Below are positions 11,521 to 59,493 of a DNA stretch of 64,000 bases, one piece after another. Both the position numbers and the translations under genes were made by a program. Numbering within the stretch: the stretch's first letter is position 1; the number at the start of each line of letters is the position of its first letter. The notes beneath the pieces are model-generated. The model worked only from the letters and a program-made list of their open reading frames with translations. It did no database searches and was not told the origin of the DNA. The DNA comes from Asterias rubens (taxonomy: Eukaryota): contig NC_047064.1 in the NCBI RefSeq assembly GCF_902459465.1, positions 2,914,001-2,978,000 on the forward strand, written 5' to 3'.

Positions 11521-12497
11521 GCCACAACTTATTGAGCATTTACATCAAGCTTAAGTTTTCTTCTTTCTTTTTTTACACCATCCTACCAGTTAGGTTTCAC
11601 TTCATACTTACAAACACATATATGCAATTCACTAATTTCTAAATCACGCAAGGCATTAGCCAATAAAACAAGAATTTGTACTGAACATATTTTTCCAATG
11701 ATTCTGCCGTGTTTGCTTACAGTTTTTGCTGAAAGTGTGTCATTTATTTTAACGAACTTATCATGCCAGATGTCCTTTTAACATTCCTTCCGGTTGTTTG
11801 AGCAATCAGGCCCCACACTAACTGTTCCTAATCGGATCCAATGACTTCATATTTTGTTTGATAGAGCTCTAGAGTGTCCTAAACATTCCAGCTGCCAGTT
11901 ATGACTACCCCTGATCTAGAACATGCCTTGATCTAGAACATGTTATTAACATGGTTTCTATTCACTGTCAATTTCGAGTAATTACCAATAATGTCCACTG
12001 CCTTTAAACCAACCTAAGTCATGTTCAACAGTACAACTAAACGGTTAAAAAAAAACTGTATCCAAATGTAGCTAAGTTTCCAAAAAATAATTTCTGATCA
12101 TGACTTCAATTCTAGGCTTTTCCCGTAAAACGGTGTGTGTCGACTGTCGTGTGCGTGACGAAAGTAGTTAATTCCTTCATTGTATTCTTTTCACCAGTGT
12201 CCCATTGTTTGACAGACTTTACCTCGTCTTCGTTTTGGCAGACAGTTTTGGCAGACAGTTTATGGTATAATTTACGATAACCTTCATAAAACAATGCCAC
12301 TCATGGTTTTAACTATTCATATCCCACCAAAATGTAAGCACATAAAATATATTTAGAAACCGTGGATTAGTTTAAAAGCGTCGTTAAATTTCTCTACCGA
12401 GAGAAAATATCTTGGTGCCCTTGCCCTTTCGAAAACGAAACAAACAGTCATGGCCTACACTTATTAATAATACACTTCCCCTTCTCCATCTCTCTAG

Positions 12498-12633
12498 GTC
12501 AACACATTTGTAGGTGCTTTCCACGATGCCGTGATTCTGTACGCCATGGCACTGAACGAGACCCTGGAAGCCAATGAGGACCCTCGAGACGGTAAAGCCT
12601 TGACTCATCGGATGTGGAACAGAACTTTTGAAG
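12498..12633 (+). CDS. NPR1: NPR-like GC exon (extracellular domain: [45 protein letters not shown])
   Basis: Acceptor ctctctag, donor G|gtaact, 136 nt; FHDAVxLYA and MWNRTF motifs. Confidence 0.95.
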
Positions 12634-42600: not shown

Positions 42601-45600
42601 TTTCGCGACTGGATTCTTGTCACGAGGGAATTTTTCTTCTTATTTCTTTTAAGAAATAGTAGTTGCTTTTGCGAATGACTCCAACTTTTCTTCGACAACA
42701 AGAACCAGCAATGCTTCACTTTAGTTGGGAGTGTGTAAATTAAAGGAATAAATCAGAAACTGCAACGAAGAAACATGAACAAGCAATTTTTACATTTTAA
42801 TTTTTTTTTACATTTTGTTGTGTATATTTTGAAACAACTGTTTCTCATTGGAGATTAACAAATCGGAGTGCGCCCTCTAGAGTGCCGGTTAAGAAAACCA
42901 GCCCGGTGCCAAAACTTAATAGCTGCAAACAAAACACACAACACGTGTTTGTATAATTTCACACACGTTCTGAAATGGTAATTGCAACGTAAATAAAGAT
43001 ATTGACACATCTGTTGTTGATCAAACCAAAGAGTGACACGACGTTTAATTAACAAGAACGTTTTAATTAAGCAATAAGTATAGCCCCTGAAAGTTTTACA
43101 TCGTTAAAAGAAAATTCTGGGTAAGATAAATTAGACACACAAAATCATTTCCTATTGGAAACTTGCGAAGCAGTGTTTTTTTCTAAGAACATGCTGTTTT
43201 AATTATCACAAGTTGAGTTTGTTTTATCTTATCTTCAATCGGCTGATGCGGCAAAACAATATGATTCCAAACGAAAAACGACGCAAGGGTAATGCAAATT
43301 TCCCCTCGTATTTGTTTATATTAGAACCTTCAAAATAATCATATAACTACACGACCTAGGTAATACTAAAAACCTTTTGTTTATTTGTTTGATCTGTTGC
43401 AGGATATTTTGGAAAATGACTCTATCGAATTGGATGACATGTTCAAGTATTCCCTTTTGTACGACATAGTCAAGGTAAGCTAACAATTAAAAACTTGAAA
43501 AGTGCATATGATGCAAATTATTATACACTTCTTATATAAGACAAAGTATAGTTAGTAAACTTGCGGGCACACCCATTTCTAGAACTCTTGTTGAAGAAGT
43601 TGTAAAAGAAAGGCTTCATATTTGACTGACAGGAAATTGGTATTTGTGTATGATCAGAATTAGCTCTCTGCAACCCGATTTTGTATAAACAGTAACCTCC
43701 ATAACCCCCGTTTAGAGGTGCATTCCCCTTTAAGCATAAACAAGGACAACTACAACCTGCTTATTTCCCACATGGTGGTTGTGGTTCAAAGCAAATGCAA
43801 ATTCCATAATTGCATCGCGGGTCCCTTCAGGTTCTCCCCCTGGCTCTAGGGGAAGCAGACCGCCAATAAGAGGCGGACTAAGCCCGCTTGGGGCTTAGGG
43901 CGTCACGGCACGGACAACGGCGGTCCTTGACTTGTATACAAACACAATTTTTTACATGTAGGCTTCCTGTAATTAATTCAAACCGCCGATACACAGTTTG
44001 TGTTCTTTCAACGTGGGAAATAGCTCGGACGTAGGGGCAAAGCAGTTGTGATTTAATGAACGCATAATCAATATAAGCCGTGATTGAATTTTCTCGGTAA
44101 AACGATTAACTCTAATTCAGAAGCTGTATTTTAAATATTATATCATTGCTTCGCTAGTTTGAATGCAGTCACACATGTACTAGATAATTATTTTGAAGGG
44201 TTTTGACAGAATTATTTTGAAAGTACATAGAGTTAATAGTTGAATAGTTAAATGAGTACAATAATGGTTAGTATGAATATTGTATAGACCCATTTGTGAG
44301 TAGTTCAACACTTCAACGAATGCAAATATTTCCATTTCACACGAAACAAAATTTTGTAATCAAAATATCAATATGGCTGGATGATAAAACTATCGAATAA
44401 ACATTTTGTACAACATTGTATTTGTCATCCATTAAAAGTGCCATTTGGTCTGCTGCACAAAGCTTGCAATAGAGGATTGGACAAAATGCATAGTTTATAA
44501 TGCTGGCCACGTGACCTACAATCCTCCAATCAAACGGCAAGGATCTACTTCAATCCTCCAATAAACATGACAATCATCTTCTTTGGTGTTATATAATGCA
44601 GAATACTCTTTAAGTGTTGTCAACGTTACAACATCAAGTTGGTCTTACTTTAATAAAAAATGTATTTTCTTTGCAAAGTTTCTTAGTTTGGTAACAACTT
44701 GATTAACGTTGATCTTCTTTCTCCTTTAGGGCATGCATTATCTCCAGAACAGCGTCATACAGACCCACGGTAACCTCAAATCCTCAAATTGTGTCGTCGA
44801 TAATCGATTTGTGGTGAAGATTACCGATTTTGGACTGCACTCGTTCCGGGAACCAGACCATCCGTTTGAACCTGATGAGGACGATCAATTCCAGTATTAC
44901 CAGAGTAAGTTATATCTTTCTTGACTTGTACACAAGAGGGCGCCCTGTATTATCTTCAGCAATACTCAGGCAATGCTTGTTTAAAGGTAGATTGTATGTT
45001 TAATTTAAACACTTCGAAATCGATTGCCTCCATGCCCTCTGGTCATTTCCTTGATGCCCTTGAAATGCTCCAGTATCAATTTACAGTTTCCTAACAGGGT
45101 GCCAAAGAGAAATGCCTTGGTGCCCTTGCCTTTTCAGATACGAAGCATACATGCCCGACTTGGTTTGAAGTTGTTTTGAGGAGAGTCATGGTGAACGGCA
45201 AAGAATTTAACACCTTTTGAACCTGATGAATGAACTTCACGTTTGTTAACCAGTCGGTTTGACTGTGGTTCTGTCGTGGTTTAGCTTAAAAGCTCAGTGG
45301 CTGCTTTCTACCGTTGTACTTGATGCTGCAAACCCTCCCTCGTGCTAATCATACATGTCCGTGTAGACAAAGTAATCACCGGGGAACGAGGAGCAATTAA
45401 GCAGATAATACGGTTTGATAATTATTCCTGTGCTATTTGTAGGTGATCACAATCACACTAAACACGCTCAAAACAGTTAAATCTTCTGGAATTTCAACAG
45501 CTCCCTGACATATTGCGACCCAATTTCACCTCGGTTTCCCCTTAGGGAGAGTTACATCTCTTCTCTTGGAGAGGGCAATACACGAATTATCGCCAAACTT

Positions 45601-48600
45601 CACACTAAGCTCAGTTGTCAATACAATACCCTAGGGCCTACCTAAAGAGTTTCTAGCATTCAAAGGCAAATAGCAAGAATTATCCTGTAGACGATGGTCA
45701 GCTGTGTCGAACCCGTGAAATAGATGTAGATTTTACTCGTGGGAGGCAGGAAATTGGTTAAGGTACCGGGTTTAGAAGATATCAATTGGGCCTGCGAGAC
45801 TAGTTACTGGATACGTCTGAGGTCGGCCTCAGCTGCCGTCCCAGGAAAGTGACACTTGAGCATGTAAGACCCCTGTTGGCGTGTTTCATGATGAAGTCCA
45901 CAGTCAAGCCTTACTTCTGAATCTGATGACCGCAATAACCTCATCTGTGGAAACGAACACTCCATTGCGGAATTAACCAGTTATACGGCAGTAACTGAGC
46001 AGGGTTGGGCCGCGCAAATTAATTAATCAGCGATTAGAATCAACTATCGCACTCTAGTGAAAATGGTGGAAGGCGCCCGTGAAAGAACGAAATTGGGTGC
46101 CGTGAGCCGTGGTTAATGATCATAATTGTTTCTGAATAATTTGGGCTGAGTGAATTGATCGTAAGATTGACCCTCAAAAGACCAACATTTGGTAACATTT
46201 TTGTTGCACTGATGTATAAGACATGTCTAAAAAATATGGATTTAAGCTACCAAATAAAAGTAGCACTGACAAATTAAATGTAGTGTCATGTGTTGACAAC
46301 AACAAAATACTCAAACAAATGTACGTCCATAAGAACTACAATAATATAGAAGCACTATAGCTTATATAAACTTTTTTTTTTTAAATGATTCCCTTCGAAC
46401 CACCAGAAGACATTTTAATCTGAGAAACGATTCGTGTTTAATACGTGTCTCAGATTTGTGGGGTTTGTGACAAAACTAATCTACGACCCTTAACCTCTCA
46501 ATTAAATGAATCGACAACAGCAACAACAACAACAACTACAACAACAACAACAACAACGCGTAACAGGTGACAAATCTTTAAAATAGTCGCTGAATTAGAT
46601 GCGCGCAATCGAGAAAAGGAATTTAATGTAGTTTTATTTTCTTCGATAACATCTCTGATCGGCGTTGATATTATCATCAACTTGATATACCAACACTATG
46701 AATATTTGATGCTCTGTTTTGGCGTGTGATGTGTAGTTTATCTCCAATGGCACTGTTGTTTCGACCCTTTTTTCACCCCTTCATCCGCGGCTCCCCGCCT
46801 GTCTTTCCCCGCCTATCTTTCCCCCAGTGGAAATTGGTTAAGATAATACCCGTCACTCATGGCGGCCCCGGCCCCAGCGGGTGTTAACAAATCGTGTGCT
46901 GTTCCGTAAAAAAAAACTAACGAAGCGGCTGAAACCAGACCGGGCTGAAAATGCGGATGTGACGGATGTTGGATGCTACTTGATGTGTTGGTATAAGCAA
47001 ACACAGCGTGTACGGGCGTACGGTGGACATTATTTTGTACATGGGGAAGTACATGAAGACGATCGGAGCATACTAATCGAAACGTCGAATCGTTAGCCAC
47101 CAATTCTATTTAGAACCAACACTTCCGTACACCACAGTCCTGAAGACGATCAGAGCATACTTATCGAAACGTTGAGTCTTTAAAAACCGGTCGTTTTCAG
47201 AACCAACACTAAAGAGATATGCACATGGCGTTATGCAAACCTCTCGTAGGAGATGGTTCCAAAGGGAATGCTTTACCTCATTTTCAAATACTTCTTATCA
47301 CTTGTTATGCAAAGGATAAACTGATTGAAGTTAAAACATTTTTTTTTACCCATCATAAGAACCTCGGTGTCCTGATATTTACTTTCTTAGCCAATGTTGT
47401 GTCTTTATTATATTTTCCTCAACATACAAGTTAGGGTACAACAACAATTATGATAGTACCCAAGATTTACCATAAAGTGTTACACAACATTCGTACCAGG
47501 CAGCTTTACAGCGCAACATTTTACACTTAGTTTTCTTTTAGAGTGCATCGTTGTACAACTGGTAGTTTAAAGCCATTGGACCCTTTCGGTAAACAGTATT
47601 GTCCAAGGCCCACACTTCGTGTACCACAACTTCTATATAAAATAACAAACCTGGGAAAATTTAGGCTCAATCGGTCATCGGAGTCGGGAGAAAATAACGG
47701 GAAAACCCACCATTGTTTCCGCGCGTTTCGCCGTGTCATGACATGTGTTTAAAATAAATCCGTAATTCTCGTTAACGCGAATTGATATCGTTTTGCTGTT
47801 TTCTCAAAAAGTAAAGCATTTCATGGAATAATATTTCAAGAGAAGTCTTTCACCACTACCTTCTGTAAACCCTGTAAGTTATTTGTAAATCTGTGAACTT
47901 TTTGGGTTTTTTCTGAACCGAAAGGGTCCAATGGCTTTAACACGTGAAGAAACTCCTTGATTTATTCTTGAGCATGTCTTTCTGATATCTGATGTTTTTG
48001 TTTGTTTGTTTGTTTGTTGCAAATACTTTTACCACTTAAAGTAAATATCAAACTCGGTTAATACAGTTTGTTTCATCTGAGTTAAGGAAATTGGTACATT
48101 TTATATTGCGAAATCAAGAAGTTTGCCTTCCCCCGCATCCTGTAACGTTTGCCCTTCGGCAAAGTTTGCTTGACCATTGTAAGTTATTTTATATTTTAAT
48201 ATTGCAAAGTTCTCCAGTTCCATTTTGAAACTGTGGGCCTTAGTCAAACTGACAACTAAGTATACGATTGAATAACGCATAAGAACACCAAAAGTTATAT
48301 TGTATTACGCCCGATATCGAAGATTTGATTGCGACTTGGTATAGTGTTTACGACGTGACACCGTTGGAGGTACTCGCACTATTATATTTGCCCGTTCGTG
48401 TCAACAGCTGGCTGTGGACAAATTTGTCGAAGACCCTTGTTCAAATAGACACAGAGCTCAAAGTGAATTAAAAATGGAAATCCGCAGCGTTCAACCAATA
48501 TGTACCGCATGATCTAGCTCCAGACTCGTACAGCTGCGTGTCTGCGTGCATAATTTTCCCAGCGACAAGATGCATCAGTTTTGCTAGACTACACTGTTGT

Positions 48601-51600
48601 AAACGGGTCTAAATTGTGTAAAATGTGTTGTAAGGAATTCTCAAGTACGTTTAAGGGGGGAGTTTCGCACTTTTCGAAGTGTTACTCCTGTGAAGTTGCA
48701 TATTTTGAAAATAATATTATTCTGTGATTGATAAAACTCAACACTTTTGCCAGTGTCGTCTAACAGCCGTGACCAAAATCAAACGTCGCTGTATTGATGA
48801 CCAAATACGAACGTCGCTTTATTGATGACCAAAATGCGAACGTTGTAGTGAATGAAAATAACAATATTATAGTCGTAAATTTTCGGGTAGGCCATACATC
48901 CATTTTTAAAGCTGATGTGGGAGAAGTACTTTTACTCAGAATGAATAAAACTATACTGTGTGAGAAGTGTTGGCTCTGAGAAGAACAGATTCTTCTGAGA
49001 ACCATTTTTTCCAAAGAGTTATACGGGGTTGTAGGCCTACCCGCAAGTTTACTTCCATAGTTTCTACTTTGATCCACACCAATGTGAAGATTCAAACACC
49101 ACTCGTTGTGAATAAGCAAAATGCAATACAAACGTCGTTTTACTGGTGAACTAAATGTGAACGTCGTTGCAATGATGATTAAATGTGAACGTCGTTGCAA
49201 TGATGACTAAAATGCGAACGTCGATGTAATGATTACCAGAACATGAGCGTCGTTGTAATGGTACTTAAAATGCGAACGTCGTTGTAATGAAGAAAAGTTA
49301 CAAACGTCGTTATAACCACAAACTTTCATTATAGAAGGCATCGTAGTGCGAGTTACTCCTCCTCATTTACGATTGGAGGAGTTTTTTCATTTCTTACGCC
49401 ACACGTCAACCATACGTCAACTTTCTTGAAGTCATTCCATCACATTTCATCGCGACGTAATCGTGCATCCCTCGATCTCTGACTTTTGAGTCCATCCACG
49501 TCTTCACACTTTGCTGATACCTCCAACTGGTAATCCAAGACCAGTCGTCTGGGTGATGGGTGCTGAAGCGTACAGTAATAAGACCGCTGGCTGTCACATT
49601 AGCTTTGTCACTTAAGTGTCAGTCGGCGGCCATGGAAGAGGGGGAGAAAATATAAAACAAGTGAGAGGATCATCAAATATTGATATTGCGAAAATAGAAG
49701 TGCCCCCATGAGGCCCGGTGCGAGGTTTCACAGTTGCTGTCATGTGTTGGGGTGGGGGATGGAATTCTTCCCCGTGCAGTAAGGATTATGAAGAATGAAT
49801 TAAACATGGACGTCTATTGAAAAAGAAAAGACAGTGTATAATCCCAGGTATGCCTATACTTAGATTACCGGTATGTGCGTTCAAACATAACACCTGGATT
49901 TACTCCTTAAATTAATAAGTGACTGCCCTTCACTATTTGATAAGCCGTTTCTATAATTTTAGTTGAAGCCAGCATCCTTTACAGGCTGTGAAGCAAAGCA
50001 ACGACATAGTATGACCCTTTCTCGCGTGTGAACTTAATAGAGTGGACGAGATTATCCAAAAAGCCACTATAGCTGAAAGATCTCTCCAAAAGCGAAGAGA
50101 CGACGTGTTTAACTCTGTTTTAGTTGCAGTGCTGTGTTTAGTGTAAACACAAAGTATGTTTTCCAATGTTAAATCAAACAGAAGCCAAGGCTTGTGGTGT
50201 ACAGGCCTGGGATATCTCAGGAATTATCAGGATTTGTCAGGATTTTAAATCAGATTATTGACTCTTCACGTTATTTTGACACTGTATTCCGGGTCAGACT
50301 GACTCAGAAATGAGTCAAGCTCTACAGGACCAAGATCCGGGTCAATTCTGACCCCGATTTGTCCAGAGTATAAGCTTATGTGGGTATTTTAAACAAATAA
50401 GAACATTCGACAGAATGCCTCTATAAAAGCACATCACGCAACAGGCTGTGTATAAACACGGACACTTTCTTTTTGCATCAATATCAACAATCAGTAGCAG
50501 AGTTGCGCTATTTGAAGTGCTACTTTCAGTGTTGTGAAGTGCTACTTTCAGTGTTGTGAAGTGCTACTTTCAGTGTTGTGAAGTGCTACTTTCAGTGTTG
50601 TGAAGTGTTCAAAGATGAGCGAGGTGAGTCCATAGTTCACAAAGCTATAGATTCATATTGCAGTAGGCCTTATAGGAGAAGAACCAACTGTTGTTTGCAC
50701 ATGATATTAATAGACATGTCCACGGTAGCTCAGTTGTTGAGTGCATTTCGATACCTTTTTATATCATTTTTTTTGTCAGAGTCCTTTGATAATCTGAGAA
50801 ACGAAAGCGGAACTTACGTCCAAAATATAAGTCTGGATTCCCCTCACGATAAGTGAGTTTCCACTTCAGGCTGTCCATACTCTTAGTGTGATATCGCGGC
50901 TAATCTACGATGATTAAAACATTTTTCACGAGAGGCCAGATGGTCTAAGTGTTTCCGAATTTACCTTTCGATTACTCTTGAATTGTGCGCTGCGACGAGA
51001 ACGACGGTGGGACAAAGTCGAAATAAGAGAGATGAACGTCTCAGGCAACTTTAGCCTTAAATATCAGTCTATTAAAGGCACTGGACACTATTGGTTATTA
51101 CTCATTTTAGAATAACACATTGTGAGACACGGCTCCCTCTGAAGTAACGTAGTTTTTTAGAAAGAGATAATTTCTCACTCAAATATTAAAAGACTTCAGG
51201 CCTGAAGCCCTTCTTTAGCATCTGAAAGCACAACGATTGTGTTTTTTCGTTTATCATTCTTTTGCAACTTCGATGACCAATTGAGTCAAAACTTTCACAG
51301 CTTTGTTATTTTATGCATACATTATGTTGGGATACACCACGTGAGAATACTGATCTTTGAAAGGTGTCCAGTGCCTTTAATGAAGGTAACGAAGATGCCG
51401 CAGTGTTCTCTTGTTTCTCTAACTGTCTGTTTCGCCTTTTGCCAAATTGAAATGGACACCAAACCGAGCGTTCAAAACATTAAAGGGAGGGATACCTCAC
51501 CATTTGATCCTTTGGGCTAGAAAGGGTGTGTTGTCTGCAATTAACACGGTTCGAAAGATGTTTTTTTTAAGTGTTCTACACAATTACAAATCGCAATGTG

Positions 51601-54600
51601 GTTTACCTTAAACTTCGTGAACTAACATACATTTTGTAGAACTATTGTGTGGACTGTGTAAGTTCACAGAATTTTAAGAAAACCTCACATTTGCAAGGGA
51701 TATTTTGTTTGAATATTTATTATCTACTTTCAAAACACCTTTCAAACCGAATTCATTTCACTACAACAAACGCGTTTATAGCCCACAGCGCCCAATGCTT
51801 TAACTTTATTCAGTGTCTCTTTGTAAAACCACAGTCACTTCATTTTAGTGACACTTTTACGGGTTGGTTGAAAGTGTGCATTGTAATTCTAAAAATTGAT
51901 TTAATGCACTCAAGTACAAAAGCAAAAGATGATGTATACAATCTATAGTGTAATAATCAGCTGCGTTCCCGATGGTCTTAAGGTGTACATTCTAGCGACT
52001 TTTTCCGGCTCAATAACGCGCAGTAGGATGTCACTGTATGATCTCACTTCCAGTTTAATCACAAAACCCCGCCACGCTGTTAGATTACTGCACATTCCAA
52101 TGAACCCTCTTGGCGGGAGGTGGTGAGGGAAAATGGCGGGAAAACTGTGATCAACCAACGGGCACCTGTCCATCTTAATTAAAATTTATCATTTCTTATT
52201 TTAGTTGTCAGTCTCTCCTAAAGGTGATACTTTTCGTCGGTTTATTGATCGGTCATTATTTCACCTCATGCCCCAAAGGCTGTCAATTGTTGGACGCACC
52301 AACGTGCTAATAATCGATAACTTTTCAGTTAAACAACTGACTCAATGTTTACCTGAACCAAAATAGTAAAAACTAAATAAATATAATATAACAACTGTCG
52401 TTGGCACTACTGTGTTCTTTGTGAGGGAATTACCATTTCAAATTCGTTCAACGATAAAACTATCTTTCGAAATGGAATAGAAGGATTGTTGGACGCTTGG
52501 TGGAAGCAGATTTAAAATATGCGCAGTTTAAAAGAACACGTTGCCTTGGATTGGTCGAGTTGGTCTTTGAAAAGCGTTTGTAACCGTTTGTTATATAATG
52601 CATATGGTTAGAAAGCTGTTTAAAAGTAGAATACAATGATCCACACACATTTGCCTCGAAATTGAGTGGTTTTCCTTTTACTTTGCGAACTAAGACGGTC
52701 GGCCATTTATGGGAGTCAAAAATTGTACTCCCATAAAAAGCCGACCGTGTTTGTCGACGAGGTAAAATGAAAACCTCGCAATTTTGAGTGATACTTGGGT
52801 GCATCATTATATTCTACGTTAAGATTTATAATGCCAATGATATTGAGAAAGATACATTTAACTATCTCCTCCCACATGACCCCCGTACAGCAAGGTTCTA
52901 CCTTCTACCTAAGATACACAAGCCCAATAACCCGGGGAGACCTATTGTATCTGGGAATGGTAGCCCCACAGAGCGCATTTCTGAGTTTGTTGATAGCTTC
53001 CTCAAACCCTTAGTCTGCCGTATTCCTTCCTTCATCAAGGATACCAAAGACTTTCTCCACAAACTAGATGAGGTCAAGCACCAAATACCTGACTCTGCTA
53101 TTTTGGTTACTTTTGATGTTTCATCACTGTATACTAACATACCCCATCATGAAGGCATGAGTGCATGTGTCTCTGCCCTCAATGCTAGTAATCAGTCCCG
53201 CCCCTCAGTGAGTCATATTAAGGAACTCATGAGCCACATTCTAATGAAGAATAATTTCACATTTTCTGACAGGCATTTTCTACAGGTACAGGGTACTGCC
53301 ATGGGTACCAAAATGGCACCCTCATATGCTAACCTATTCATGTCTCAGTTGGAGGACAGACTCCTGTCCTCCGCCCCCAACCGACCACTAGTTTGGTGGA
53401 GATTTATTGATGATATTTTCTCCATCTGGTGTGGTGACCAAGACAGCTTGGATGAGTTTATTGCCCATATCAACTCATTTCACCCCACCATAAAGTTCAC
53501 TACCGAACAATCTCTCACCAGTGTGAACTTTCTAGATGTGACAATAACCAAGTCTCCTAATGGCCTTGTCACAGATGTTTACAGTAAACCCACCGACACC
53601 CACCAGTACCTTCTCTCCAATAGCTGTCACCCTAGTCACTGTAAGAAGGCAATTGCTTACAGTCAGGCCTTACGTATCAGGCGTATCTGTTCCACAGATA
53701 CCCTGTACAAGAGGCGCTCATCAGAGCTAAGGAAACACCTTGTATCTAGGGGACACAGCGAACGTAGGGTCCAACTTGCTATCAACAGGGCTCTCAACGT
53801 ACCTCGTCATACTCTGTTGACTAACACGGGAGCTAAAAAACCTCCTACCAATAGAGTTGCTTTGGTCACCACCTTCCACCCCAAACTACCCAAACTTCCC
53901 TCAATTCTCAATAATAACATGCCTATACTTCACTCCTCCAGCAGGTTACACTCAGCAATCACTGAGGTTCCCATGGTTGCATTCCGCCGCCCTAAGAACC
54001 TTGGTGACATACTAGTCAGGGCCAAACTTCCCCCAGGTACAGTCCAAACACAACCCCCGACAGATATACTGGGCTGTCACAAATGTACCCGTTCCAAATG
54101 CAAAACGTGTCTGCACATTAAGCCCTCACTTAAGGTGAAGAGTCATACCACTGGCTCTTCATACAACATCAAGACCGACTCTGAATGCAGCACGTCTAAT
54201 GTAGTCTATGTCATATCATGTAAGAGATGTGGGCTACAATATGTGGGAGAGACTAAGACCAAACTTAGTCTTCGCTTTGCGAATCATGTCTCTTCCATAA
54301 AGACTAAGAAACCGTACCCAGTCTCTATCCACTTCAACAGCCCCAATCATAGTGTCATTGATGTTGAACTTCTGGTGATTGAAGCTTGCAATGGTGATGA
54401 CACACACCGCAAGAATAGAGAATCACACTGGATTCACCAACTCAAGACAGTAAAACCCTTTGGACTTAACATAAACACTGGTGTTAAATAACTTCTCATT
54501 ACCCTCCACTTCACTTCTGCCTAAGAACTCATATGTTGTATATATTCTGTACATAAAGTATAAATTAACCTAGTTTAAAGTTGTTTTTATAAATTCATCA

Positions 54601-57600
54601 CTGTAACTATCTGATGTAAGTAACCCCCCCCTTTTTTTTTTCCACAGGTCCCTCATACCTATTTTTAAAATCATCATACCTTTGATCTTGCTATTCTTAT
54701 TAATTGACCATTGTTAGTTGCATCATGATGCAACTTGCTCTCTAATCCTACCCTTTCATGTCTCCCTCCATTGTTGTCGAACAATACATTTACCACTTTT
54801 ATGGTCCAGTAACCCTTCCTTTCATTCTAAACATCCTTTGTCCTCGCCACTTCACTCCTATTGGTTCATAGCCCCCAATACTGTTTCTGAAATAGGAACT
54901 TTGATTGGCTGTTATTTTCCCGCTTCTTTCTGGATCCTTTCCTTAATCCCTTTCCCCCTCTCTTTTTCTATAAATGGATATGTATTTGTTTGTACTTGTC
55001 TTATGCCTCTGAAGAAGGTCCGGATTGGATCGAAAGCTAAGGCCATCTACCCTATTCATTATATTATATTCTACTTTAAATATCTTTCTAATCAAATGCA
55101 TTTTATAACCATCTGTTACAAACGCTTTTCAAAGATCAACTCGACCGATCCAAGGCAACGTGTTCCTTTAAAAAGTGTCACAAATTATTTCTAAGATATA
55201 ACAATTAACATTGGATGGGTATTTTTTTATCATCAAGAATTTTGCATAAAATGAATTTTAAAAGCAGTTTTGATTTCCACTGAAGATATTTCACTGAATT
55301 ATTTTCTCGTATTTGATACGCGAGATCGAGACTTGCACTATAATGTTAACCTACTTTGAAACCTTTTGGTAAACTTTTTCCATGCTGTAAAGAGCACAAT
55401 ATTATATATGCGATCGTATTATGTTTCCAAGAGCGTGATAAGGTATAACACTCTTTCTTCCAAATTTCACACGTATAGAGGGGGCGAAAAAAGGGTCGAG
55501 ATGGATTGCTTTTCGTTCGCCGATCATGCATGATAATACTTATGCACTGAACAGTAGATGCGCTGAATAAGATCACTCAATAAGACCACTCACTTGAACA
55601 TGTCTTGGTTTTTGCGCGTTGGTATCGCAAATACCAACTCGCACGCGCAGACTGTTGAATGAGGTGCATTGTGGGATATATATGGATCAAATTTGGATAC
55701 CAGCAAGACCACAATGCACCTAATTCCTAGCTTTACGCGCGCGCCCCGGTATTTGCGAAAAGTACTATGTAAGCGCCATGCTGTAAACCCTTCGCGGAGG
55801 TTCGTGGTTGCACGCTGTTGGTGCCTTTGTAAGGCCTTTACAAGTCGATTAAGGCTCGCCTCGACAATAAAAAATGTCTCTAAAATAAATATAAAAATTC
55901 TACTCTCTTGCTCCCTGGATAACATGCCACTGTATAAATATAGAAGCATTGTACGGTCACTCTCGTTAATACGAGGTCTGCCGGACATTGTCCTCGTTAT
56001 ATCTGAACGATCGGCTCATCCAGCAGCTTAGCCCCGCGGTTGTTTTGACAATTGTGCATGCTTTGCGAACGTGCTCAGGGCTTTAGACAATTACACGAGT
56101 ACGGAGCCTGAAGCTGAATCCAAAGCCGAAGCCGTGGATTCGAAAAGGGCCATGCATACTTATCACACGTGGGATAGTAATTTTGCCAACATTTTCAAAA
56201 GTTTCAATTGCAAACGCAATAACCATTTGCTGTCTTCTTGAACACTGCGTGGATTTTAAGTCTTTCGAGAGTGTTTCAAATTATTGTTTAATGTTTTAAT
56301 GTATTTGGTTATTGCGCATTTCATCATTCGATTAACGGGTGAACGACCGGAGTAATCCCTGCATCTTAAATTTGGTGGGAAACCTTGGGGAGGCAACTGT
56401 CTTATTGATTCGTCAGCGCAAAACCAGAGGCGCATTTCCTGTGAGAAATCACTTCACATGATCGATATGCATGAATTAGCATATGAGATCATCAGACTTG
56501 TATATGAAGACATATTTCTCATCTGAACTGTAAAAGGTAGAGACGTCTAAAGAGACTGCCCTGGAGTTGACCGCATCAATTCTTATGATGCAAAGGTTGT
56601 AGGAGGACAGACCTTCCCCTTTACCCGTCAAGTTGTGTTTATAAAAGGATCCAAACATCATGATATTTCCTTGTAGGTTATTATATCAATACCCAATCTC
56701 TCGAAAGCATTATTTTCGTTGCGTTTAGGCATGATTTGGATTAATTTGAATACAGCTTGTACAGTAGGGGTGTTGTTTTAATTGTAGGTTTCTTTGATTG
56801 TTAACATTGGCTGTTACTGCTTTTAGATATCACAAATATCAGAAATTTGCATATAGTTGCTATTTTTATTGCAACTACACATCTTTTTAACAAGAAGAGA
56901 ACATGTAGAGATTTTTAATTTGTGTTATTCTTTTCTACAGGCTTAGCTTTTAATTCTGATTTGATTCCGGTATTATAACTTTAAGTATTTAAAGATATAT
57001 TTAAAGGCAGTGGACACTATTGGTAATTACTCAAAATAATTGTTAGCATAAAACCTTTCTTGGTGACAAGTAATGGGGAGAGGTTGATGGTATAAAACAT
57101 TGTGAGAACCGGCACCCTCTGAAGTGCAATAGTTTTTGAGAAAGAAGTAATTTTCCACCAATTTGATTTCGAGACCTCAGATTTAGAACTTGAGGTCTCG
57201 AAATCAACCATCTAAACGCACACAACTTCGTGTGACAAGGGCGTTTTTTTCTTTCATTGTTATCTCGCAAGTTCGATGACCAATTGAGTTCAAATTTTCA
57301 CAGGTTTGTTATTTTATGCATATGTTGAGATACACAAACTGTGAAGGCTAGTCTTTGACAACTACCAATAGTGTCCAATGTCTTTAATAAATCATTTATA
57401 TTTAAATAAATAGGAGGAATTGGATCAGATATTTTAAAAATGACAAATTTACGATTTGATGAAAATCTACACAAAATCCAAGACTGTTTGCACAACATTA
57501 ATGACTTTATTAATTTCAGTGAGGTAATACTGTAGCCTCCACGTGTAACTTGTTATTTCTGCGGTATATAAAGTGTTTAATGTGACAGATCCATCAGCCT

Positions 57601-59493
57601 ATAGACGATGTGACCTTTGTGTACATTCAAACCGCCCTCTGTTGACGAAACACTATATACGTCATGTTTGGCCGGGCACTGAGTTGCGTAGTCCTAGTAA
57701 GATTGCGTACACTTTCTAACTGGCTGCCAAAACACAAAGGTTTTGCCCGGCGGTATGCGCGCGAATCATGTTATGGTTTTCGTGTGACGTCAGAGGTCAC
57801 ATCGTCTTATCAACCAGTTCCACGGCCCAGATGCATACTGGTTGCATAAGTAGCACATTTGAAGCAGGGTGTTATTAAAAGTCATCAAGCATTCAACGCC
57901 TGTAGGCAGTGGCTGACTGATATACTTCACTTACGGCCTAGAAACAAATGTTGAAGTCATTAACATTTAGATGTTCTATTTAAGAAGCATCGAAGCTTTG
58001 TTTCGTTTCACATTCTTAATGACGTTCAAAGGACCTGAAATTTTCATTTGAGGCCTTGGGAGCACAGACACTATTTGGAGGCTATATAATGTATTGACCA
58101 TTCATCACAAAAGCAGGTAATTGCTGTTGAGATAAATTTAAAGAGACAGGGGCAAAAGATGCACAGACAAGGCAAGGGATGAACGAAGAGATTTGAAACA
58201 CAAACATTCTGAAAGTGTTTTTGAGTAGGTTTTGTATGGAACGGCAGATTGTATGTAATTATACCGGTGTGTGAGTGTAGCATGGTTGTATACATTTTTG
58301 CATTCTGGCATCTTGTGTATCATATAGGTAAAGTTTACAATAGAATAGAAATAATATACATTTTGATACATATGCAAATGATGTGAATTCAACCCAAAAG
58401 TAATCCATTTGTGTTGGTTGTTGAACATGCTTATCTGCTGAAAAGCGAACCGAGGTCATTTCGTGTATAGGTCTACGGTGATGATTTGGTCGAAGATAAA
58501 CTTCATATATCTTAATAGCAGAGTCATCTCTGAAGTTGAAATACGCTCGTGGGATTGAACTACCTAAACATGCCTTTGAAAAACATTTCTTTGTGTCCAG
58601 GGAAATCACTAAGATATTGTGTTATTCCAATCATTATTGTGTCCAATTCAACGAAGAAAACATGAAGCTCATGTGCTCTCACATGGGACCGCCAACAGAC
58701 AATGTCTATAGATAGACAACAATGTATTTAAACTAAAGGCAATTGATTTGAGAGTCCACAGCGACTGATCTTTCCAATCGTGACAAGATAAACAACTATA
58801 CTCATTCTCAACTTGATATAAATGAAGAACTCTGTCGTGGTGCGTTCAGATTGGGGTTACAGTAGTCTGGTTCCTTTCCCGGTATGTTGGAGATTTGTGT
58901 TCATCCATTCATTCATTCATTCATTCATTCAATAATGGTTTTATTCTTTAAAGACCCTGGACACTATTGGTAGTTGTCAAAGACTAGTCTTCACAGTTGG
59001 TGTATCTCAACATATGCATAAAATAACAAACCTGTGAAAACTTGAGCGAGGTCTCGACATTAAGCATCTGAAAGCACATAACTTGTGCGACAAGGGAGTT
59101 TTTTCTTGCATTTGATATTCTCTCGCAACTTCGACGGCCAATTGAGTTCAAATGTCCATCTGTTTGTTATGTTATGCATATGTTGATGAGATACACCAAA
59201 TGAATAGACTGGTCTTTGACAATTACCAAAGGTGTCCAGTGCATAAAGATTAAACTAAGTTTGTTTGTGGAATATATCGTCTATCCAATTAATAACAAAC
59301 TCTTCTTCTTTTTCTCTTTCCTTTCCCCCCTTTCCAGAGAGGCTATGGTCGGCACCGGAGCTCCTTCGTCTACCGGAGATGCCCCTAGGTGGAACCCAAA
59401 AGGCTGATGTATATAGCTTTGGTGTCATTGTCCACGAAATCATATATAGAGAGAGTGTCTTCTACGTAGCTAATGTAGACCTGTCGCCTAAAG
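12498..59493 (+). CDS. NPR1: Receptor (transmembrane) guanylyl cyclase, natriuretic peptide receptor 1/2-like; partial, 11 internal exons: 12498-12633, 14140-14234, 21550-21691, 22840-22915, 30451-30574, 37759-37824, 39220-39297, 40430-40534, 43403-43474, 44730-44904, 59338-59493
   Basis: Manual splicing at GT-AG sites gives one open frame (intron phases 1,0,1,2,0,0,0,0,0,1): [23 protein letters not shown]...[29 protein letters not shown]...[38 protein letters not shown]...GNIIAIKK...[18 protein letters not shown]...[16 protein letters not shown]...[24 protein letters not shown]...RLWSAPELL...QKADVYSFG...DLSPK. These are hallmark NPR-family motifs. The symbol is family-level, since NPR1 versus NPR2 is a vertebrate split. 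Confidence 0.95.
14140..14234 (+). CDS. NPR1: NPR-like GC exon ([32 protein letters not shown])
   Basis: Acceptor ttgtccag, donor gtaagt, 95 nt; GxVxIDxNGDR motif. Confidence 0.95.
14983..15190. mobile_element. MITE family F (GGGCCAATTTTATAGAGCTGCT...AGCAGCTCTATGAAATTGGGCC)
   Basis: About 22-bp TIR; relatives at 28156-28338, with partial copies near 31625-31770 and 41475-41617. Confidence 0.8.
17584..17700 (-). mobile_element. Degenerate tRNA-derived SINE-like repeat
   Basis: Minus strand: ctccgttggtagtgcgccagcacgttaatcc (A-box-like) ... gttggttcatgccc (B-box-like), then a T-rich tail. Confidence 0.45.
18951..19289. mobile_element. MITE family C (TTAA|AGGAACACGTTGCCTTGGATCGG...)
   Basis: Long TIRs; central palindrome ggccatttatgggagtc/gactcccataaatggcc carrying a local duplication. 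Confidence 0.9.
20310..20569 (-). mobile_element. tRNA-derived SINE
   Basis: Minus strand: A box GTGGCCGAGTGG (20550-20561), B box GGTTCGAATCC (20491-20501), then a core gtgtccctgagcaagacact...ctccacccaggggtaaatgggtacc that resembles conserved central domains of metazoan SINEs; does not fold as a full tRNA. Confidence 0.8.
21550..21691 (+). CDS. NPR1: NPR-like GC exon (juxtamembrane Cys region: [47 protein letters not shown])
   Basis: Acceptor gtgttacag, donor gtaagt, 142 nt; WPxxxPPxDxPxCGF motif. Confidence 0.95.
21704..22072. mobile_element. MITE family A
   Basis: ttaa|aggcatggacactattgg ... ccaaatgtgtccaatgcct|ttaa. Confidence 0.88.
22305..22670. mobile_element. MITE family D
   Basis: ttaa|agggtctatg...gtaggacaaaaaaacacaacgtccacagattt; collinear with 3822-4208. 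Confidence 0.8.
22840..22915 (+). CDS. NPR1: NPR-like GC exon, transmembrane helix ([26 protein letters not shown])
   Basis: Acceptor cttcttcaacag, donor AG|gtacgt, 76 nt; hydrophobic stretch; phases fit both neighbouring exons. Confidence 0.9.
23641..23714. repeat. Minisatellite (about 21 bp, tccatcttgaaaagcccctcc)
   Basis: 3.5 tandem units. Confidence 0.75.
23974..24348. mobile_element. MITE family A
   Basis: ttaa|aggcttggacactatt ... aaggtgtccagtgcct|ttaa. Confidence 0.88.
25800..26132. repeat. Modular degenerate tandem repeat
   Basis: gaaaggcagagcaaa-type motif x3, ggctac runs x2, catgcgtcgaa x2, agcaacat x3. Confidence 0.6.
27344..27986. mobile_element. 643-bp non-autonomous TIR element, TA-flanked
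   Basis: Perfect 29-bp inverted repeat tactgatgaataacggcacacggtgatgt (27344-27372) / acatcaccgtgtgccgttattcatcagta (27958-27986). Confidence 0.75.
28156..28338. mobile_element. MITE family F
   Basis: tggcccaatttaatagagctgcttaagc ... ggcagttctataaaatttgacc. Confidence 0.7.
30451..30574 (+). CDS. NPR1: NPR-like GC exon ([42 protein letters not shown])
   Basis: Long poly-T tract then cgatttacag acceptor, donor gtaggt, 124 nt; ExELxxMxWxIxW motif. Confidence 0.95.
32850..33235. mobile_element. MITE family D, opposite orientation
   Basis: ttaa|aggattcggatactttttcaaaatgtcc ... tgaccct|ttaa. Confidence 0.8.
34670..34910. repeat. TIR element with multiple GGGTCA/TGACCC subterminal repeats
   Basis: acactc...gagtgt ends; similar TGACCC-rich tracts at about 2950-3012, 27655-27795 and 50278-50370. 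Confidence 0.55.
37612..37648 (+). ncRNA. Degenerate minimal hammerhead motif (probable Penelope/retrozyme 3'-end remnant)
   Basis: CCT CCGATAA A GAC-tctgctatg-GTC GAAA CG TC AGG; stems and the GAAAC/GUC side are intact, but the core has two substitutions relative to CUGAUGA. Confidence 0.6.
37759..37824 (+). CDS. NPR1: NPR-like GC exon ([22 protein letters not shown])
   Basis: Acceptor tttttattcacag, donor gtgagg, 66 nt; QIFxxTGxYK motif; absent from the ORF track because it is short. Confidence 0.9.
39220..39297 (+). CDS. NPR1: NPR-like GC exon ([26 protein letters not shown])
   Basis: Acceptor gacccgcag, donor gtaagt, 78 nt; VAIK-equivalent lysine. Confidence 0.95.
39510..39632. mobile_element. 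Diverged copy of the 59603-59750 palindromic MITE
   Basis: ggggtggcagcagacttacc ... ggtaagtctgcttcccccagcgttccaaagtctcc. Confidence 0.75.
40430..40534 (+). CDS. NPR1: NPR-like GC exon ([35 protein letters not shown])
   Basis: Acceptor ctcgtttcag, donor gtaaga, 105 nt. Confidence 0.97.
43403..43474 (+). CDS. NPR1: NPR-like GC exon ([24 protein letters not shown])
   Basis: Acceptor ctgttgcag, donor gtaagc, 72 nt. Confidence 0.95.
44730..44904 (+). CDS. NPR1: NPR-like GC exon ([58 protein letters not shown])
   Basis: Acceptor ttctcctttag, donor A|gtaagt, 175 nt; HGNLKSSN pseudokinase loop and DFG. Confidence 0.97.
46515..46557. repeat. (CAA)n microsatellite
   Basis: Seen directly. Confidence 0.9.
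47053..47209 (+). ncRNA. Tandem pair of minimal hammerhead-like motifs in 87-bp direct repeats
   Basis: ATGAAGA C GATCGG-AGCATA-CTAATC GAAA CGTC (47053-47086) and CTGAAGA C GATCAG-AGCATA-CTTATC GAAA CGTT (47140-47173); each is followed by agaaccaacact. Confidence 0.6.
47567..47940. mobile_element. MITE family B, opposite orientation
   Basis: ttaa|agccattggaccctttcgg ... ccgaaagggtccaatggct|ttaa; the interior is the reverse complement of 7441-7809. Confidence 0.9.
48771..49313. repeat. About 28-bp minisatellite (aaatgcgaacgtcgttgtaatgatgac) in two blocks separated by about 270 bp
   Basis: About 3 units at 48771-48855 and about 7 units at 49125-49313. Confidence 0.75.
50514..50607. repeat. 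Perfect 22-bp tandem repeat (gaagtgctactttcagtgttgt) x4.3
   Basis: Four identical abutting units with no spacers. Confidence 0.95.
51072..51380. mobile_element. MITE family A, internally deleted
   Basis: ttaa|aggcactggacactattgg ... aaggtgtccagtgcct|ttaa. Confidence 0.85.
52824..54491 (+). CDS. Penelope-like element ORF: reverse transcriptase + Cys-rich linker + GIY-YIG endonuclease (N-terminally truncated, 555 aa without stops)
   Basis: [58 protein letters not shown]; linker [12 protein letters not shown]; [19 protein letters not shown]...RFANH...ESHWI..L...PFGLN. The listed start at 52788 is a GTG inside the flanking MITE, not a real start codon. Confidence 0.95.
   Translation: MYNANDIEKDTFNYLLPHDPRTARFYLLPKIHKPNNPGRPIVSGNGSPTERISEFVDSFLKPLVCRIPSFIKDTKDFLHKLDEVKHQIPDSAILVTFDVSSLYTNIPHHEGMSACVSALNASNQSRPSVSHIKELMSHILMKNNFTFSDRHFLQVQGTAMGTKMAPSYANLFMSQLEDRLLSSAPNRPLVWWRFIDDIFSIWCGDQDSLDEFIAHINSFHPTIKFTTEQSLTSVNFLDVTITKSPNGLVTDVYSKPTDTHQYLLSNSCHPSHCKKAIAYSQALRIRRICSTDTLYKRRSSELRKHLVSRGHSERRVQLAINRALNVPRHTLLTNTGAKKPPTNRVALVTTFHPKLPKLPSILNNNMPILHSSSRLHSAITEVPMVAFRRPKNLGDILVRAKLPPGTVQTQPPTDILGCHKCTRSKCKTCLHIKPSLKVKSHTTGSSYNIKTDSECSTSNVVYVISCKRCGLQYVGETKTKLSLRFANHVSSIKTKKPYPVSIHFNSPNHSVIDVELLVIEACNGDDTHRKNRESHWIHQLKTVKPFGLNINTGVK
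55005..55043 (+). ncRNA. Minimal type I hammerhead ribozyme at the Penelope 3' end
   Basis: GCCT CTGAAGA A GGTCC-GGATT-GGATC GAAA GC TA AGGC: stem I GCCU/AGGC, intact CUGANGA and GAAA cores, 5-bp stem II (one G-U pair), palindromic AGCU stem III, CUA cleavage triplet. Confidence 0.85.
57001..57387. mobile_element. MITE family A, full length (about 380 bp, central palindrome ttcgagacctca...tgaggtctcgaa)
   Basis: ttaa|aggcagtggacactattggta ... taccaatagtgtccaatgtct|ttaa. Confidence 0.9.
58948..59247. mobile_element. MITE family A, rearranged copy with two right arms in inverted orientation
   Basis: 58948-59048 is the reverse complement of the family right arm; the sequence then switches at gaggtctcga to forward orientation and ends with a second right arm. 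Confidence 0.75.
59338..59493 (+). CDS. NPR1: NPR-like GC exon ([52 protein letters not shown])
   Basis: Long pyrimidine tract then tttccag acceptor, donor G|gtaaac, 156 nt; WxAPELL and DVYSFG motifs. Confidence 0.96.

What the first reader, a model, noticed from the sequence alone, without database searches (positions are those of the whole stretch)
55005..55043. Intact hammerhead ribozyme in the sense strand of the host pre-mRNA
All catalytic-core nucleotides and three stems are present: GCCU-CUGAAGA-A-GGUCC(GGAUU)GGAUC-GAAA-GC-UA-AGGC, with predicted cleavage after 55039 (seen). Minimal type I hammerheads at PLE termini are established. The element is co-oriented with the guanylyl cyclase gene, so every host transcript carries this ribozyme in the 14.4-kb intron. 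Cleavage before splicing could reduce or truncate expression. Activity may need dimerisation through the AGCU palindrome (inference).
Basis: partly seen in the sequence, partly recalled or inferred. Interest (0 to 1): 0.7.

Follow-up and report, generated by a model that had tools for sequence, protein, structure and literature searches.

The report
Retrotransposon hammerhead motif in cyclase intron
The 39-base hammerhead ribozyme motif is real, but it is the standard tail motif of a very common, young Penelope-like jumping gene that landed in an intron of a guanylyl cyclase gene; as a lone copy it probably cuts little or not at all, so it is an ordinary case of a known kind.

Summary
Bases 55005-55043 (+) carry every hammerhead core nucleotide, a 4-bp stem I, a 5-6-bp stem II and an AGCU palindrome in place of stem III. 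The predicted cut is at 55039/55040. The motif lies 25 nt from the 3' end of a 5'-truncated Penelope-like element (PLE, 52818-55064; RT + C-terminal GIY-YIG). A 10-bp target duplication flanks the element, which sits inside a MITE-like palindromic repeat. That repeat lies in a 14,433-nt intron (44905-59337) of a +-strand receptor guanylyl cyclase gene, so the sense-strand claim holds.

The motif matches the published "min-HHR" of metazoan PLEs point for point: unpaired base between A9 and G10.1, G10.1-C11.1, palindromic 15.2-16.2, short stem I. The genome holds at least 812 such motifs (7 in a reversed-pattern control). A second family shows compensatory changes in both stems.

Cleavage of the host pre-mRNA is unsupported:
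- This copy has no partner motif in about 94 kb of the gene region.
- Published single min-HHRs showed no detectable cleavage.
- Nearest-neighbour energies give no gain on dimerisation.
- In all 17 forward-strand genomic copies inspected the element runs about 25 nt past the cut site.
- An RNA-library contig reads through the site.

RNA ends could not be mapped, because no raw reads were served. Verdict: new member of a known kind; low interest.

The parts
55005..55043 (+). Minimal type I hammerhead motif (min-HHR). Stem I is 55005-55008 paired with 55040-55043. The core CUGAAGA is 55009-55015, followed by an unpaired A at 55016. Stem II with its loop is 55017-55031. GAAA is 55032-55035. The AGCU palindrome is 55035-55038 and A17 is 55039.
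55039..55040 (+). Predicted self-cleavage site (after A17). No RNA-end evidence was obtained.
   Evidence: Inferred from the hammerhead numbering applied to the sequence. One search shows contigs spanning this site.
52818..55064 (+). 5'-truncated copy of a young, high-copy Penelope-like retroelement. It lacks about 1.3-1.7 kb of the 5' end, including the upstream pLTR and its hammerhead.
   Evidence: RVT_1 + GIY-YIG. (P0001, 908 aa, 100% identical). table 8 (contigs match from 52818 and run a further 1347-1663 nt upstream in full copies). (shared 3' end). (full-length copies).
52818..54491 (+). [quoted passage not shown] The listed ORF starts at 52788, inside the flanking repeat.
54781..55059 (+). 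279-nt pLTR unit carrying the hammerhead. Some other copies repeat it head to tail.
   Evidence: L013: hammerheads 279 nt apart, with the junction ...ctattcat|acaatacattt.
52808..52817 (+). Left copy of the 10-bp target-site duplication TATATTCTAC.
   Evidence: compared with the ruler.
55065..55074 (+). Right copy of the 10-bp target-site duplication TATATTCTAC.
52528..52817 (.). Left part of a roughly 390-nt palindromic MITE-like repeat into which the PLE inserted. The genome holds thousands of copies.
   Evidence: 4139 first-look candidates, 91-93% identity. (intact copies L051, L052, L061). (inverted repeat I2).
55065..55171 (.). Right part of the same MITE-like repeat.
44905..59337 (+). 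Host intron (14,433 nt) of the receptor guanylyl cyclase gene. The donor is GTAAGT and the acceptor is a polypyrimidine tract followed by CAG.
44730..44904 (+). Upstream kinase-homology exon (...[24 protein letters not shown]...).
59338..59493 (+). Downstream kinase-homology exon (...LWSAPELLR...[13 protein letters not shown]...).

Best explanation
The motif is the standard minimal hammerhead (min-HHR) carried in the 3' pseudo-LTR of a Penelope-like retroelement. A 5'-truncated copy of a very young, probably still active PLE family inserted by target-primed reverse transcription at a TA-rich site. That site lies in a MITE-like repeat inside a 14.4-kb intron of a receptor guanylyl cyclase gene, in the sense orientation. 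In its native setting (upstream pLTR, ORF, downstream pLTR) one transcript carries two identical motifs. These can pair through the AGCU palindrome into a double hammerhead, possibly helped by the element's own protein. In this copy the motif is solitary. It is transcribed only as a passenger of the host pre-mRNA and is expected to be nearly or fully inactive. It is therefore a by-product of the insertion, not a regulator of the cyclase gene. Shown: the motif, the PLE identity, the insertion anatomy, the intron and strand, the copy number, and covariation between families. Inferred: dimer-dependent activity in the native context, and near-silence of the lone copy.
For: Motif and fold. PLE identity: RVT_1 + GIY-YIG; a 908-aa protein 100% identical over the shared part; at least 12 full-length copies with uninterrupted 916-930-aa frames at 99-100% identity. 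Shared 3' end: at least 40 scored copies at 96-100% identity; the 17 forward-strand copies whose 3' flank was read all end ...AGGCCATCTACCCTATTCATTATAT + (TA)n. Insertion anatomy: the 10-bp duplication and the interrupted MITE. Native layout: two co-oriented motifs 4451 nt apart around a full-length ORF (C2:24070019 and C2:24074470; ORF at C2:24071355), and tandem 279-nt pLTR units (L013). Selection on structure: 812 genomic motifs against 7 in the control; a second family keeps the core, the extra A, G10.1-C11.1 and AGCU while changing 3 stem II pairs and 1-3 stem I pairs compensatorily. Match to the published min-HHR definition, and published lack of cleavage by single motifs: PMC4209133 and PMC6765202. 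A PLE hammerhead that needs its protein, with no RNA-seq ends at the site: PMC11167929. Lone copy. No thermodynamic gain on dimerisation. Genomic copies run 25 nt past the cut site. A 1560-nt contig from an RNA library spans 53495-55054.
Against: No direct activity or RNA-end data exist for this motif or this family. Only assembled contigs were available, and they cannot show RNA ends. The RNA libraries may also contain DNA. Trans-dimerisation with abundant PLE transcripts, or assistance by PLE protein from the many intact copies, cannot be excluded. Nearest-neighbour energies ignore tertiary contacts and proteins. Rfam hammerhead models do not score the motif.
Confidence: 0.8

Rival explanations
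1. The solitary motif does cleave the cyclase pre-mRNA at a meaningful rate. It would do so by pairing in trans with PLE transcripts or with help from PLE protein, so that it competes with splicing and lowers or truncates expression.
For: The core is intact and the sense-strand intronic position is confirmed. Many intact PLE copies could supply RNA and protein. PLE sequences appear in RNA-library contigs. Protein-assisted cleavage is published for a lizard PLE (PMC11167929). An intronic ribozyme that competes with splicing is published for Cpeb3 (PMC10919898, listed). Retrozymes are depleted from Xenopus introns (bioRxiv 10.64898/2026.07.22.740005).
Against: No cis partner lies in about 94 kb of the gene region. 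Helix III would be only 4 bp, with no energy gain on dimerisation. Published single motifs were inactive and dimers were weak. Genomic copies and an RNA-library contig pass the cut site uncut. The genome holds at least 812 such motifs, split evenly between the two contig strands; their orientation relative to genes was not tested.
Confidence: 0.07
2. The motif is conserved in these PLEs for a reason other than self-cleavage, for example as a protein-binding or reverse-transcription-initiation structure, and it never cleaves in vivo even in tandem.
For: Published in vitro activity of metazoan min-HHRs is very low, and functions other than cleavage were left open. No RNA-seq ends were found at the lizard PLE site, and catalytic mutants did not affect insertion in vitro. 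All inspected genomic copies extend past the cut site. PLE clades that lack hammerheads still proliferate (PMC8557442).
Against: All catalytic-core nucleotides are conserved across two families whose stems have diverged. That pattern is what selection for catalysis predicts. Dimer cleavage is published for PLE hammerheads (Lunse et al. 2016, as cited in PMC6765202).
Confidence: 0.1
3. Any effect of this insertion on the cyclase gene comes from ordinary transposon features, such as cryptic splice sites, transcription interference or chromatin, and not from the ribozyme.
For: The sense strand of the fragment holds two GTRAGT donor-like sites (53208, 54616) and two polypyrimidine-AG sites (53609, 54624). 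The intron is 14.4 kb, whereas the matching paralog intron is about 200 nt.
Against: The fragment has no AATAAA or ATTAAA on the sense strand. No transcript evidence of exonisation was obtained. RNA-library contigs show no depth on the unique flanks.
Confidence: 0.05

Closest known systems
Minimal hammerheads (min-HHR) of metazoan Penelope-like elements (Cervera & de la Pena 2014, PMC4209133; Lunse, Weinberg & Breaker 2016, cited in PMC6765202)
   Same: Type I topology and a 4-bp helix I. One unpaired base between A9 and G10.1. The G10.1-C11.1 pair. A palindromic 15.2-16.2 (AGCU) in place of a stem III hairpin. Location in the pLTR near the 3' end. Hundreds of genomic copies, mostly on truncated elements. 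Families that differ by compensatory changes.
   Different: Helix II is 5-6 bp here, against 7-8 bp in the Schistosoma families. The host is reported by earlier notes of this scan to be a starfish, and the 2014 paper's main text mentions no echinoderm. The copies are nearly identical, like the reinvading D. virilis family and unlike the usual heterogeneous sets.
Neptune/Nematis-type endonuclease-positive PLEs (Arkhipova 2006; Craig et al. 2021, PMC8557442)
   Same: [quoted passage not shown] A Cys-rich CxxC...CxxC linker just before GIY-YIG. (TA)n at insertion sites. pLTRs, tandem units and a short tail beyond the hammerhead.
   Different: Clade placement was not tested by phylogeny. The assignment rests on the linker motif and the target preference only.
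Intronic self-cleaving ribozymes (amniote intronic hammerheads HH9/HH10, de la Pena & Garcia-Robles 2010; CPEB3 HDV-like ribozyme, PMC10919898)
   Same: A ribozyme motif on the sense strand of an intron, where co-transcriptional cleavage could compete with splicing.
   Different: Those ribozymes are complete, active as monomers, and conserved at orthologous positions across species. This one is a recent transposon passenger without stem III, with no tertiary loop contacts, and with no evidence of conservation at this locus.
Animal non-LTR retrozymes and newt or Schistosoma satellite hammerheads
   Same: Type I hammerheads with a 1-2-bp helix III and a palindromic loop that act as dimers in tandem repeats. 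They are related to PLE pLTRs (bioRxiv 10.64898/2026.07.22.740005).
   Different: Those are short tandem non-autonomous units that give circular RNAs. Here there is a single motif on a truncated autonomous element.

Membership tests
Hammerhead ribozyme (catalytic core) | Conserved core C3 U4 G5 A6 N7 G8 A9 ... G12 A13 A14, the A15.1-U16.1 pair, and H17 (not G) at the cleavage site | tested here: met
   All are present at 55009-55015 and 55032-55039, and H17 = A.
Hammerhead ribozyme (three-way junction) | Three helices (I, II, III) around the core | tested here: inconclusive
   Helix I (4 bp) and helix II (5-6 bp) form in the MFE fold. Helix III does not exist in the monomer. It can form only between two copies, as 4 bp of AGCU with AGCU, and this gives no net nearest-neighbour gain.
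Hammerhead ribozyme | Self-cleavage at the predicted site | not testable with these tools
   Only assembled contigs were served, so no RNA ends can be read.
Rfam hammerhead families (Hammerhead_1, Hammerhead_3, HH9, HH10, Hammerhead_II) | A score at or above the gathering threshold of a hammerhead covariance model | tested here: not met
   No hit at gathering thresholds on the window, and no hammerhead hit even at E<=10 on 54500-55500. This is expected for a motif without a stem III hairpin or loop 1.
Metazoan PLE min-HHR (Cervera & de la Pena 2014) | [quoted passage not shown] | tested here: met
   A at 55016. The same A is present in all six sequences compared. The criterion is taken from PMC4209133.
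Metazoan PLE min-HHR | A conserved G10.1-C11.1 pair | tested here: met
   G55017-C55031. The pair is invariant in both families.
Metazoan PLE min-HHR | Palindromic positions 15.2-16.2 (and loop 3, where present) | tested here: met
   A-GC-U at 55035-55038, which is its own reverse complement.
Metazoan PLE min-HHR | Location in the pLTR of an element that encodes RT + GIY-YIG | tested here: met
   The motif is 514 nt after the ORF stop and 25 nt before the element's end. The pLTR unit is tandemly repeated in L013.
Metazoan PLE min-HHR | Families within a genome that differ by compensatory changes | tested here: met
   Family 1 has GCCU/AGGC and GGUCC/GGAUC. Family 2 has GCAU/AUGC or UGUGU/ACACA, and GUAGU/GCUAC.
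Penelope-like element, endonuclease-positive (C-terminal EN) | A single ORF with an RT domain followed by a GIY-YIG endonuclease | tested here: met
   RVT_1 E=6e-11 and GIY-YIG E=7e-6 in the window ORF. Both domains are also found in the 908-aa protein P0001.
Neptune/Nematis clade of PLEs | A CX2-5CxxC linker motif upstream of GIY-YIG, and placement in an RT phylogeny | tested here: inconclusive
   A linker reading [13 protein letters not shown] is present. No phylogeny was built.

The most novel reading that the evidence does not exclude
Lone sense-strand PLE hammerheads in introns become active only when the PLE family is expressed, through trans-dimerisation with PLE RNA or through PLE protein acting as a chaperone. 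Bursts of transposon activity would then cut many host pre-mRNAs at once, this cyclase among them.
Probability: 0.05. Interest if true: 0.65.

Novelty: new member of a known kind. Interest (0 to 1): 0.2.

Why it matters
The finding adds a well-defined, very young and probably active PLE family with a textbook min-HHR. By this scan's earlier notes the genome is a starfish, a group that the papers read here do not cover. The family could serve as experimental material. It offers many intact copies, natural single, tandem (279-nt) and 4.45-kb-spaced arrangements, and a second family with compensatory stems. These allow a test of whether PLE hammerheads act as dimers or need the element's protein. 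For the cyclase gene itself nothing special is indicated. The same motif occurs at least 812 times in the genome, and no data show cleavage.

Tried and rejected
1. Rfam scans of the whole window at gathering thresholds and of the local 1 kb at E<=10 gave no hammerhead family, only chance snoRNA-like hits.
2. A search for a second copy of the motif in the window with up to 3 mismatches found none. A structural descriptor run over about 94 kb of the gene region found only this site.
3. I first thought of a Hydra-clade PLE, because the ORF is only 567 aa and the target is TA. I rejected this: the full protein is 908-921 aa and the window copy is 5'-truncated.
4. I first read the inverted repeat I2 as an inverted PLE fragment. 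I rejected this too: it is a separate 390-nt palindromic MITE-like repeat that the PLE interrupted.
5. tblastn and an HMM built from three distant paralog ORFs found no kinase-homology exons in the window. The exons appeared only with a closer paralog.
6. RNA evidence: all runs served were assembled contigs. They show neither RNA ends nor strand, and the unique intron flanks had no depth in three of four runs.
7. Lunse et al. 2016 (PMC5785218) is not held, so it is cited only through the review.
8. MAFFT put the two families out of register in stem II. I therefore counted pairs with a script and did not use the count of structure pairs.

Full report
OBSERVATION. In hammerhead numbering:
- GCCU is strand 2.4-2.1 of helix I.
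- CUGAAGA is C3-A9.
- One unpaired A follows at 55016.
- GGUCC(GGAUU)GGAUC is helix II, with G10.1-C11.1.
- GAAA is G12 A13 A14 A15.1.
- GC is 15.2/16.2, then U16.1, then A17 at 55039.
- AGGC is strand 1.1-1.4.

The predicted cut is therefore between 55039 and 55040. ViennaRNA folds the 39-mer, and 66- and 116-nt contexts, into helices I and II as drawn. The monomer has no helix III.

The motif is not a chance match. A strict descriptor asks for the core, at least 3 bp in helices I and II, and a palindromic A..U segment. It finds only this site on both strands of about 94 kb of the gene region. Genome-wide, the pattern CTGANGA-N14-18-CGAAAGCT has 812 matches against 7 for the reversed pattern. 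Rfam 15 does not score the motif, either at gathering thresholds or at E<=10 on the local kilobase. This is what one expects for a motif without a stem III hairpin.

WHAT IT BELONGS TO. [quoted passage not shown] A 908-aa protein in the public collection is 100% identical over the shared part. The genome holds at least a dozen copies with uninterrupted 916-930-aa frames at 99-100% identity. The family is therefore very young and probably active.

The window copy is 5'-truncated. RNA-library contigs match from 52818 onward and continue 1347-1663 nt further upstream in full copies (table 8). At the 3' end, at least 40 scored copies match at 96-100% identity, out of 2906 first-look candidates. 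The 17 forward-strand copies whose 3' flank was read all end ...AGGCCATCTACCCTATTCATTATAT, followed by a variable (TA)n and then unique DNA. The hammerhead thus sits 25 nt from the element's end.

The unit 54781-55059 (279 nt) is repeated head to tail in another copy (L013), so it is the pseudo-LTR. The linker before GIY-YIG reads [13 protein letters not shown]. Together with the TA target, this points to the Neptune/Nematis type described in PMC8557442. No phylogeny was built.

INSERTION ANATOMY. The PLE fragment (52818-55064) is flanked by a 10-bp duplication, TATATTCTAC, at 52808-52817 and 55065-55074. It interrupts a 390-nt palindromic MITE-like repeat, of which intact copies exist elsewhere. 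That repeat explains the inverted repeat I2 and the very high contig depth on both flanks.

HOST GENE. Guanylate_cyc exons lie on the + strand 13-16 kb beyond the window's end. ANF_receptor exons lie on the + strand in and before the window. Translated open segments of a closer paralog (C3:5624001-5654000) give a strictly collinear series of +-strand matches:
- window 12501-12635, 14139-14237, 40427-40555, 43397-43477, 44757-44906 and 59337-59462;
- then L034 1443-1616, 5399-5554, 8719-8859 and 9144-9248;
- then L039 3077-3292 and 5692-5802.

The exon 44730-44904 encodes ...[24 protein letters not shown]... and ends before GTAAGT. The exon 59338-59493 follows a polypyrimidine-CAG and encodes ...LWSAPELLR...[13 protein letters not shown].... 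The matching paralog intron is only about 200 nt. The hammerhead is therefore on the sense strand of this intron.

COMPARISON WITH WHAT IS KNOWN. Cervera and de la Pena (PMC4209133) defined the min-HHR of metazoan PLEs. [quoted passage not shown] Every one of these features is met here (see the membership table).

A second family in this genome keeps the core, the extra A, G10.1-C11.1, AGCU and H17. It replaces GCCU/AGGC by GCAU/AUGC or UGUGU/ACACA, and GGUCC/GGAUC by GUAGU/GCUAC. This argues that the structure is under selection in the active elements.

The same paper reports no detectable cleavage by a single motif. It reports only low cleavage by dimers or trimers, mostly at non-physiological Mg2+. 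A review states the same and cites Lunse et al. for dimer cleavage (PMC6765202). For a lizard PLE, cleavage needed the element's protein, catalytic mutants did not affect insertion in vitro, and no RNA-seq reads ended at the site (PMC11167929).

HOW IT MOST LIKELY WORKS. In the native layout a full-length ORF lies between two co-oriented motifs. One example is C2:24070019 and C2:24074470, 4451 nt apart, around the ORF at C2:24071355. Some loci carry 279-nt tandem pLTRs. A transcript with two motifs can form a domain-swapped double hammerhead. In that structure strand 2.x of one copy pairs with strand 1.x of the other, and the two AGCU segments form a 4-bp helix III.

For the window copy this cannot happen in cis. 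It is truncated, it carries one motif, and no second one exists in the gene region held here. In trans, the nearest-neighbour energy of the double hammerhead (-20.9 kcal/mol) is no better than that of two hammerhead-shaped monomers (-21.0) or two MFE monomers (-23.6). Spontaneous dimerisation is therefore not favoured.

Two further observations fit weak or absent cleavage at 3' motifs. All inspected genomic copies run 25 nt past the cut site, so the templates that were copied had not been cut there. A 1560-nt contig from a metatranscriptomic RNA library spans 53495-55054, although DNA carry-over cannot be excluded. I conclude that the motif is a passenger of the insertion and is probably near-silent in the host pre-mRNA.

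WHAT REMAINS OPEN. No tool here could show RNA ends. All runs offered were assembled contigs, and the unique intron flanks had no depth in three of the four runs. Trans activation by PLE RNA or protein from the many intact copies is conceivable. It has conceptual precedents: the Cpeb3 intronic ribozyme (PMC10919898) and the depletion of retrozymes from Xenopus introns. I give it about 5-7%.

The sense strand of the fragment has no AATAAA or ATTAAA. It has two donor-like and two acceptor-like sites, so ordinary transposon effects are a minor alternative.

VERDICT. The structural and positional parts of the interpretation are right, and the regulatory inference is unsupported. The object is a new member of a known kind, the PLE min-HHR, and one of at least 812 in this genome. 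Interest is low. Earlier notes of this scan flagged related hammerhead repeats in the same gene and called the genome a starfish. I did not verify the species.

Noticed in passing
window 47050-47223 (+), same intron: Two 87-nt tandem units carry a different hammerhead-like motif, CUGAAGA-CGAUC..AUCG-GAAACGU(C/U), with an ACGU palindrome. The first unit has A in place of C3, and the second pairs only 2 bp plus 1 in helix I, so both look decayed. The AGCU and ACGU palindromes could not pair with each other. The scan already holds a note on this stretch (s1-150861).
   Followed up: partly
window 52528-52817 + 55065-55171; intact copies L051:1501-1890, L052, L061: A 390-nt palindromic (foldback, MITE-like) repeat with at least 4139 first-look candidates at 91-93% identity. 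RNA-library contigs show very high depth on it.
   Followed up: partly
G000:C3 2.63-2.87 Mb, upstream of the window: Six separate N-terminal ANF_receptor exon hits lie on the + strand (2631857, 2643840, 2805052, 2809181, 2833896, 2866537). Only one cyclase catalytic domain is found in the region (2991113-2993802). These could be receptor-only genes, pseudogenes or alternative first exons.
   Followed up: no
window 12351-12656 (+): The ANF_receptor match here contains 4 in-frame stops. The paralog-based match covers only 12501-12635. The extracellular part of this cyclase gene may be split into small exons or partly decayed.
   Followed up: no
G000:C6:5698583, C7:8221360, C18:5134744, C6:19786307, C6:11067331: A second PLE family has intact 931-aa frames and is 45% identical to the N-terminal third of the first family. 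It may be the carrier of the family 2 hammerhead (CUGAUGA-A-GUAGU..GCUAC-GAAAGCU).
   Followed up: no
G000:C2:3838654/3838819 and C2:8012260/8012425: Pairs of identical family 1 hammerheads lie only 165 nt apart on the same strand. This is shorter than the 279-nt pLTR unit, so they may be retrozyme-like short tandem derivatives.
   Followed up: no
window 50491-50622: A 22-nt tandem repeat (TGAAGTGCTACTTTCAGTGTTG, about 5-6 copies) lies in the same intron.
   Followed up: no
G000:C3:5653237-5653510 (paralog locus L038): A fragment of the same PLE 3' region lies on the + strand just downstream of the last cyclase-domain match of the paralogous cyclase gene.
   Followed up: no
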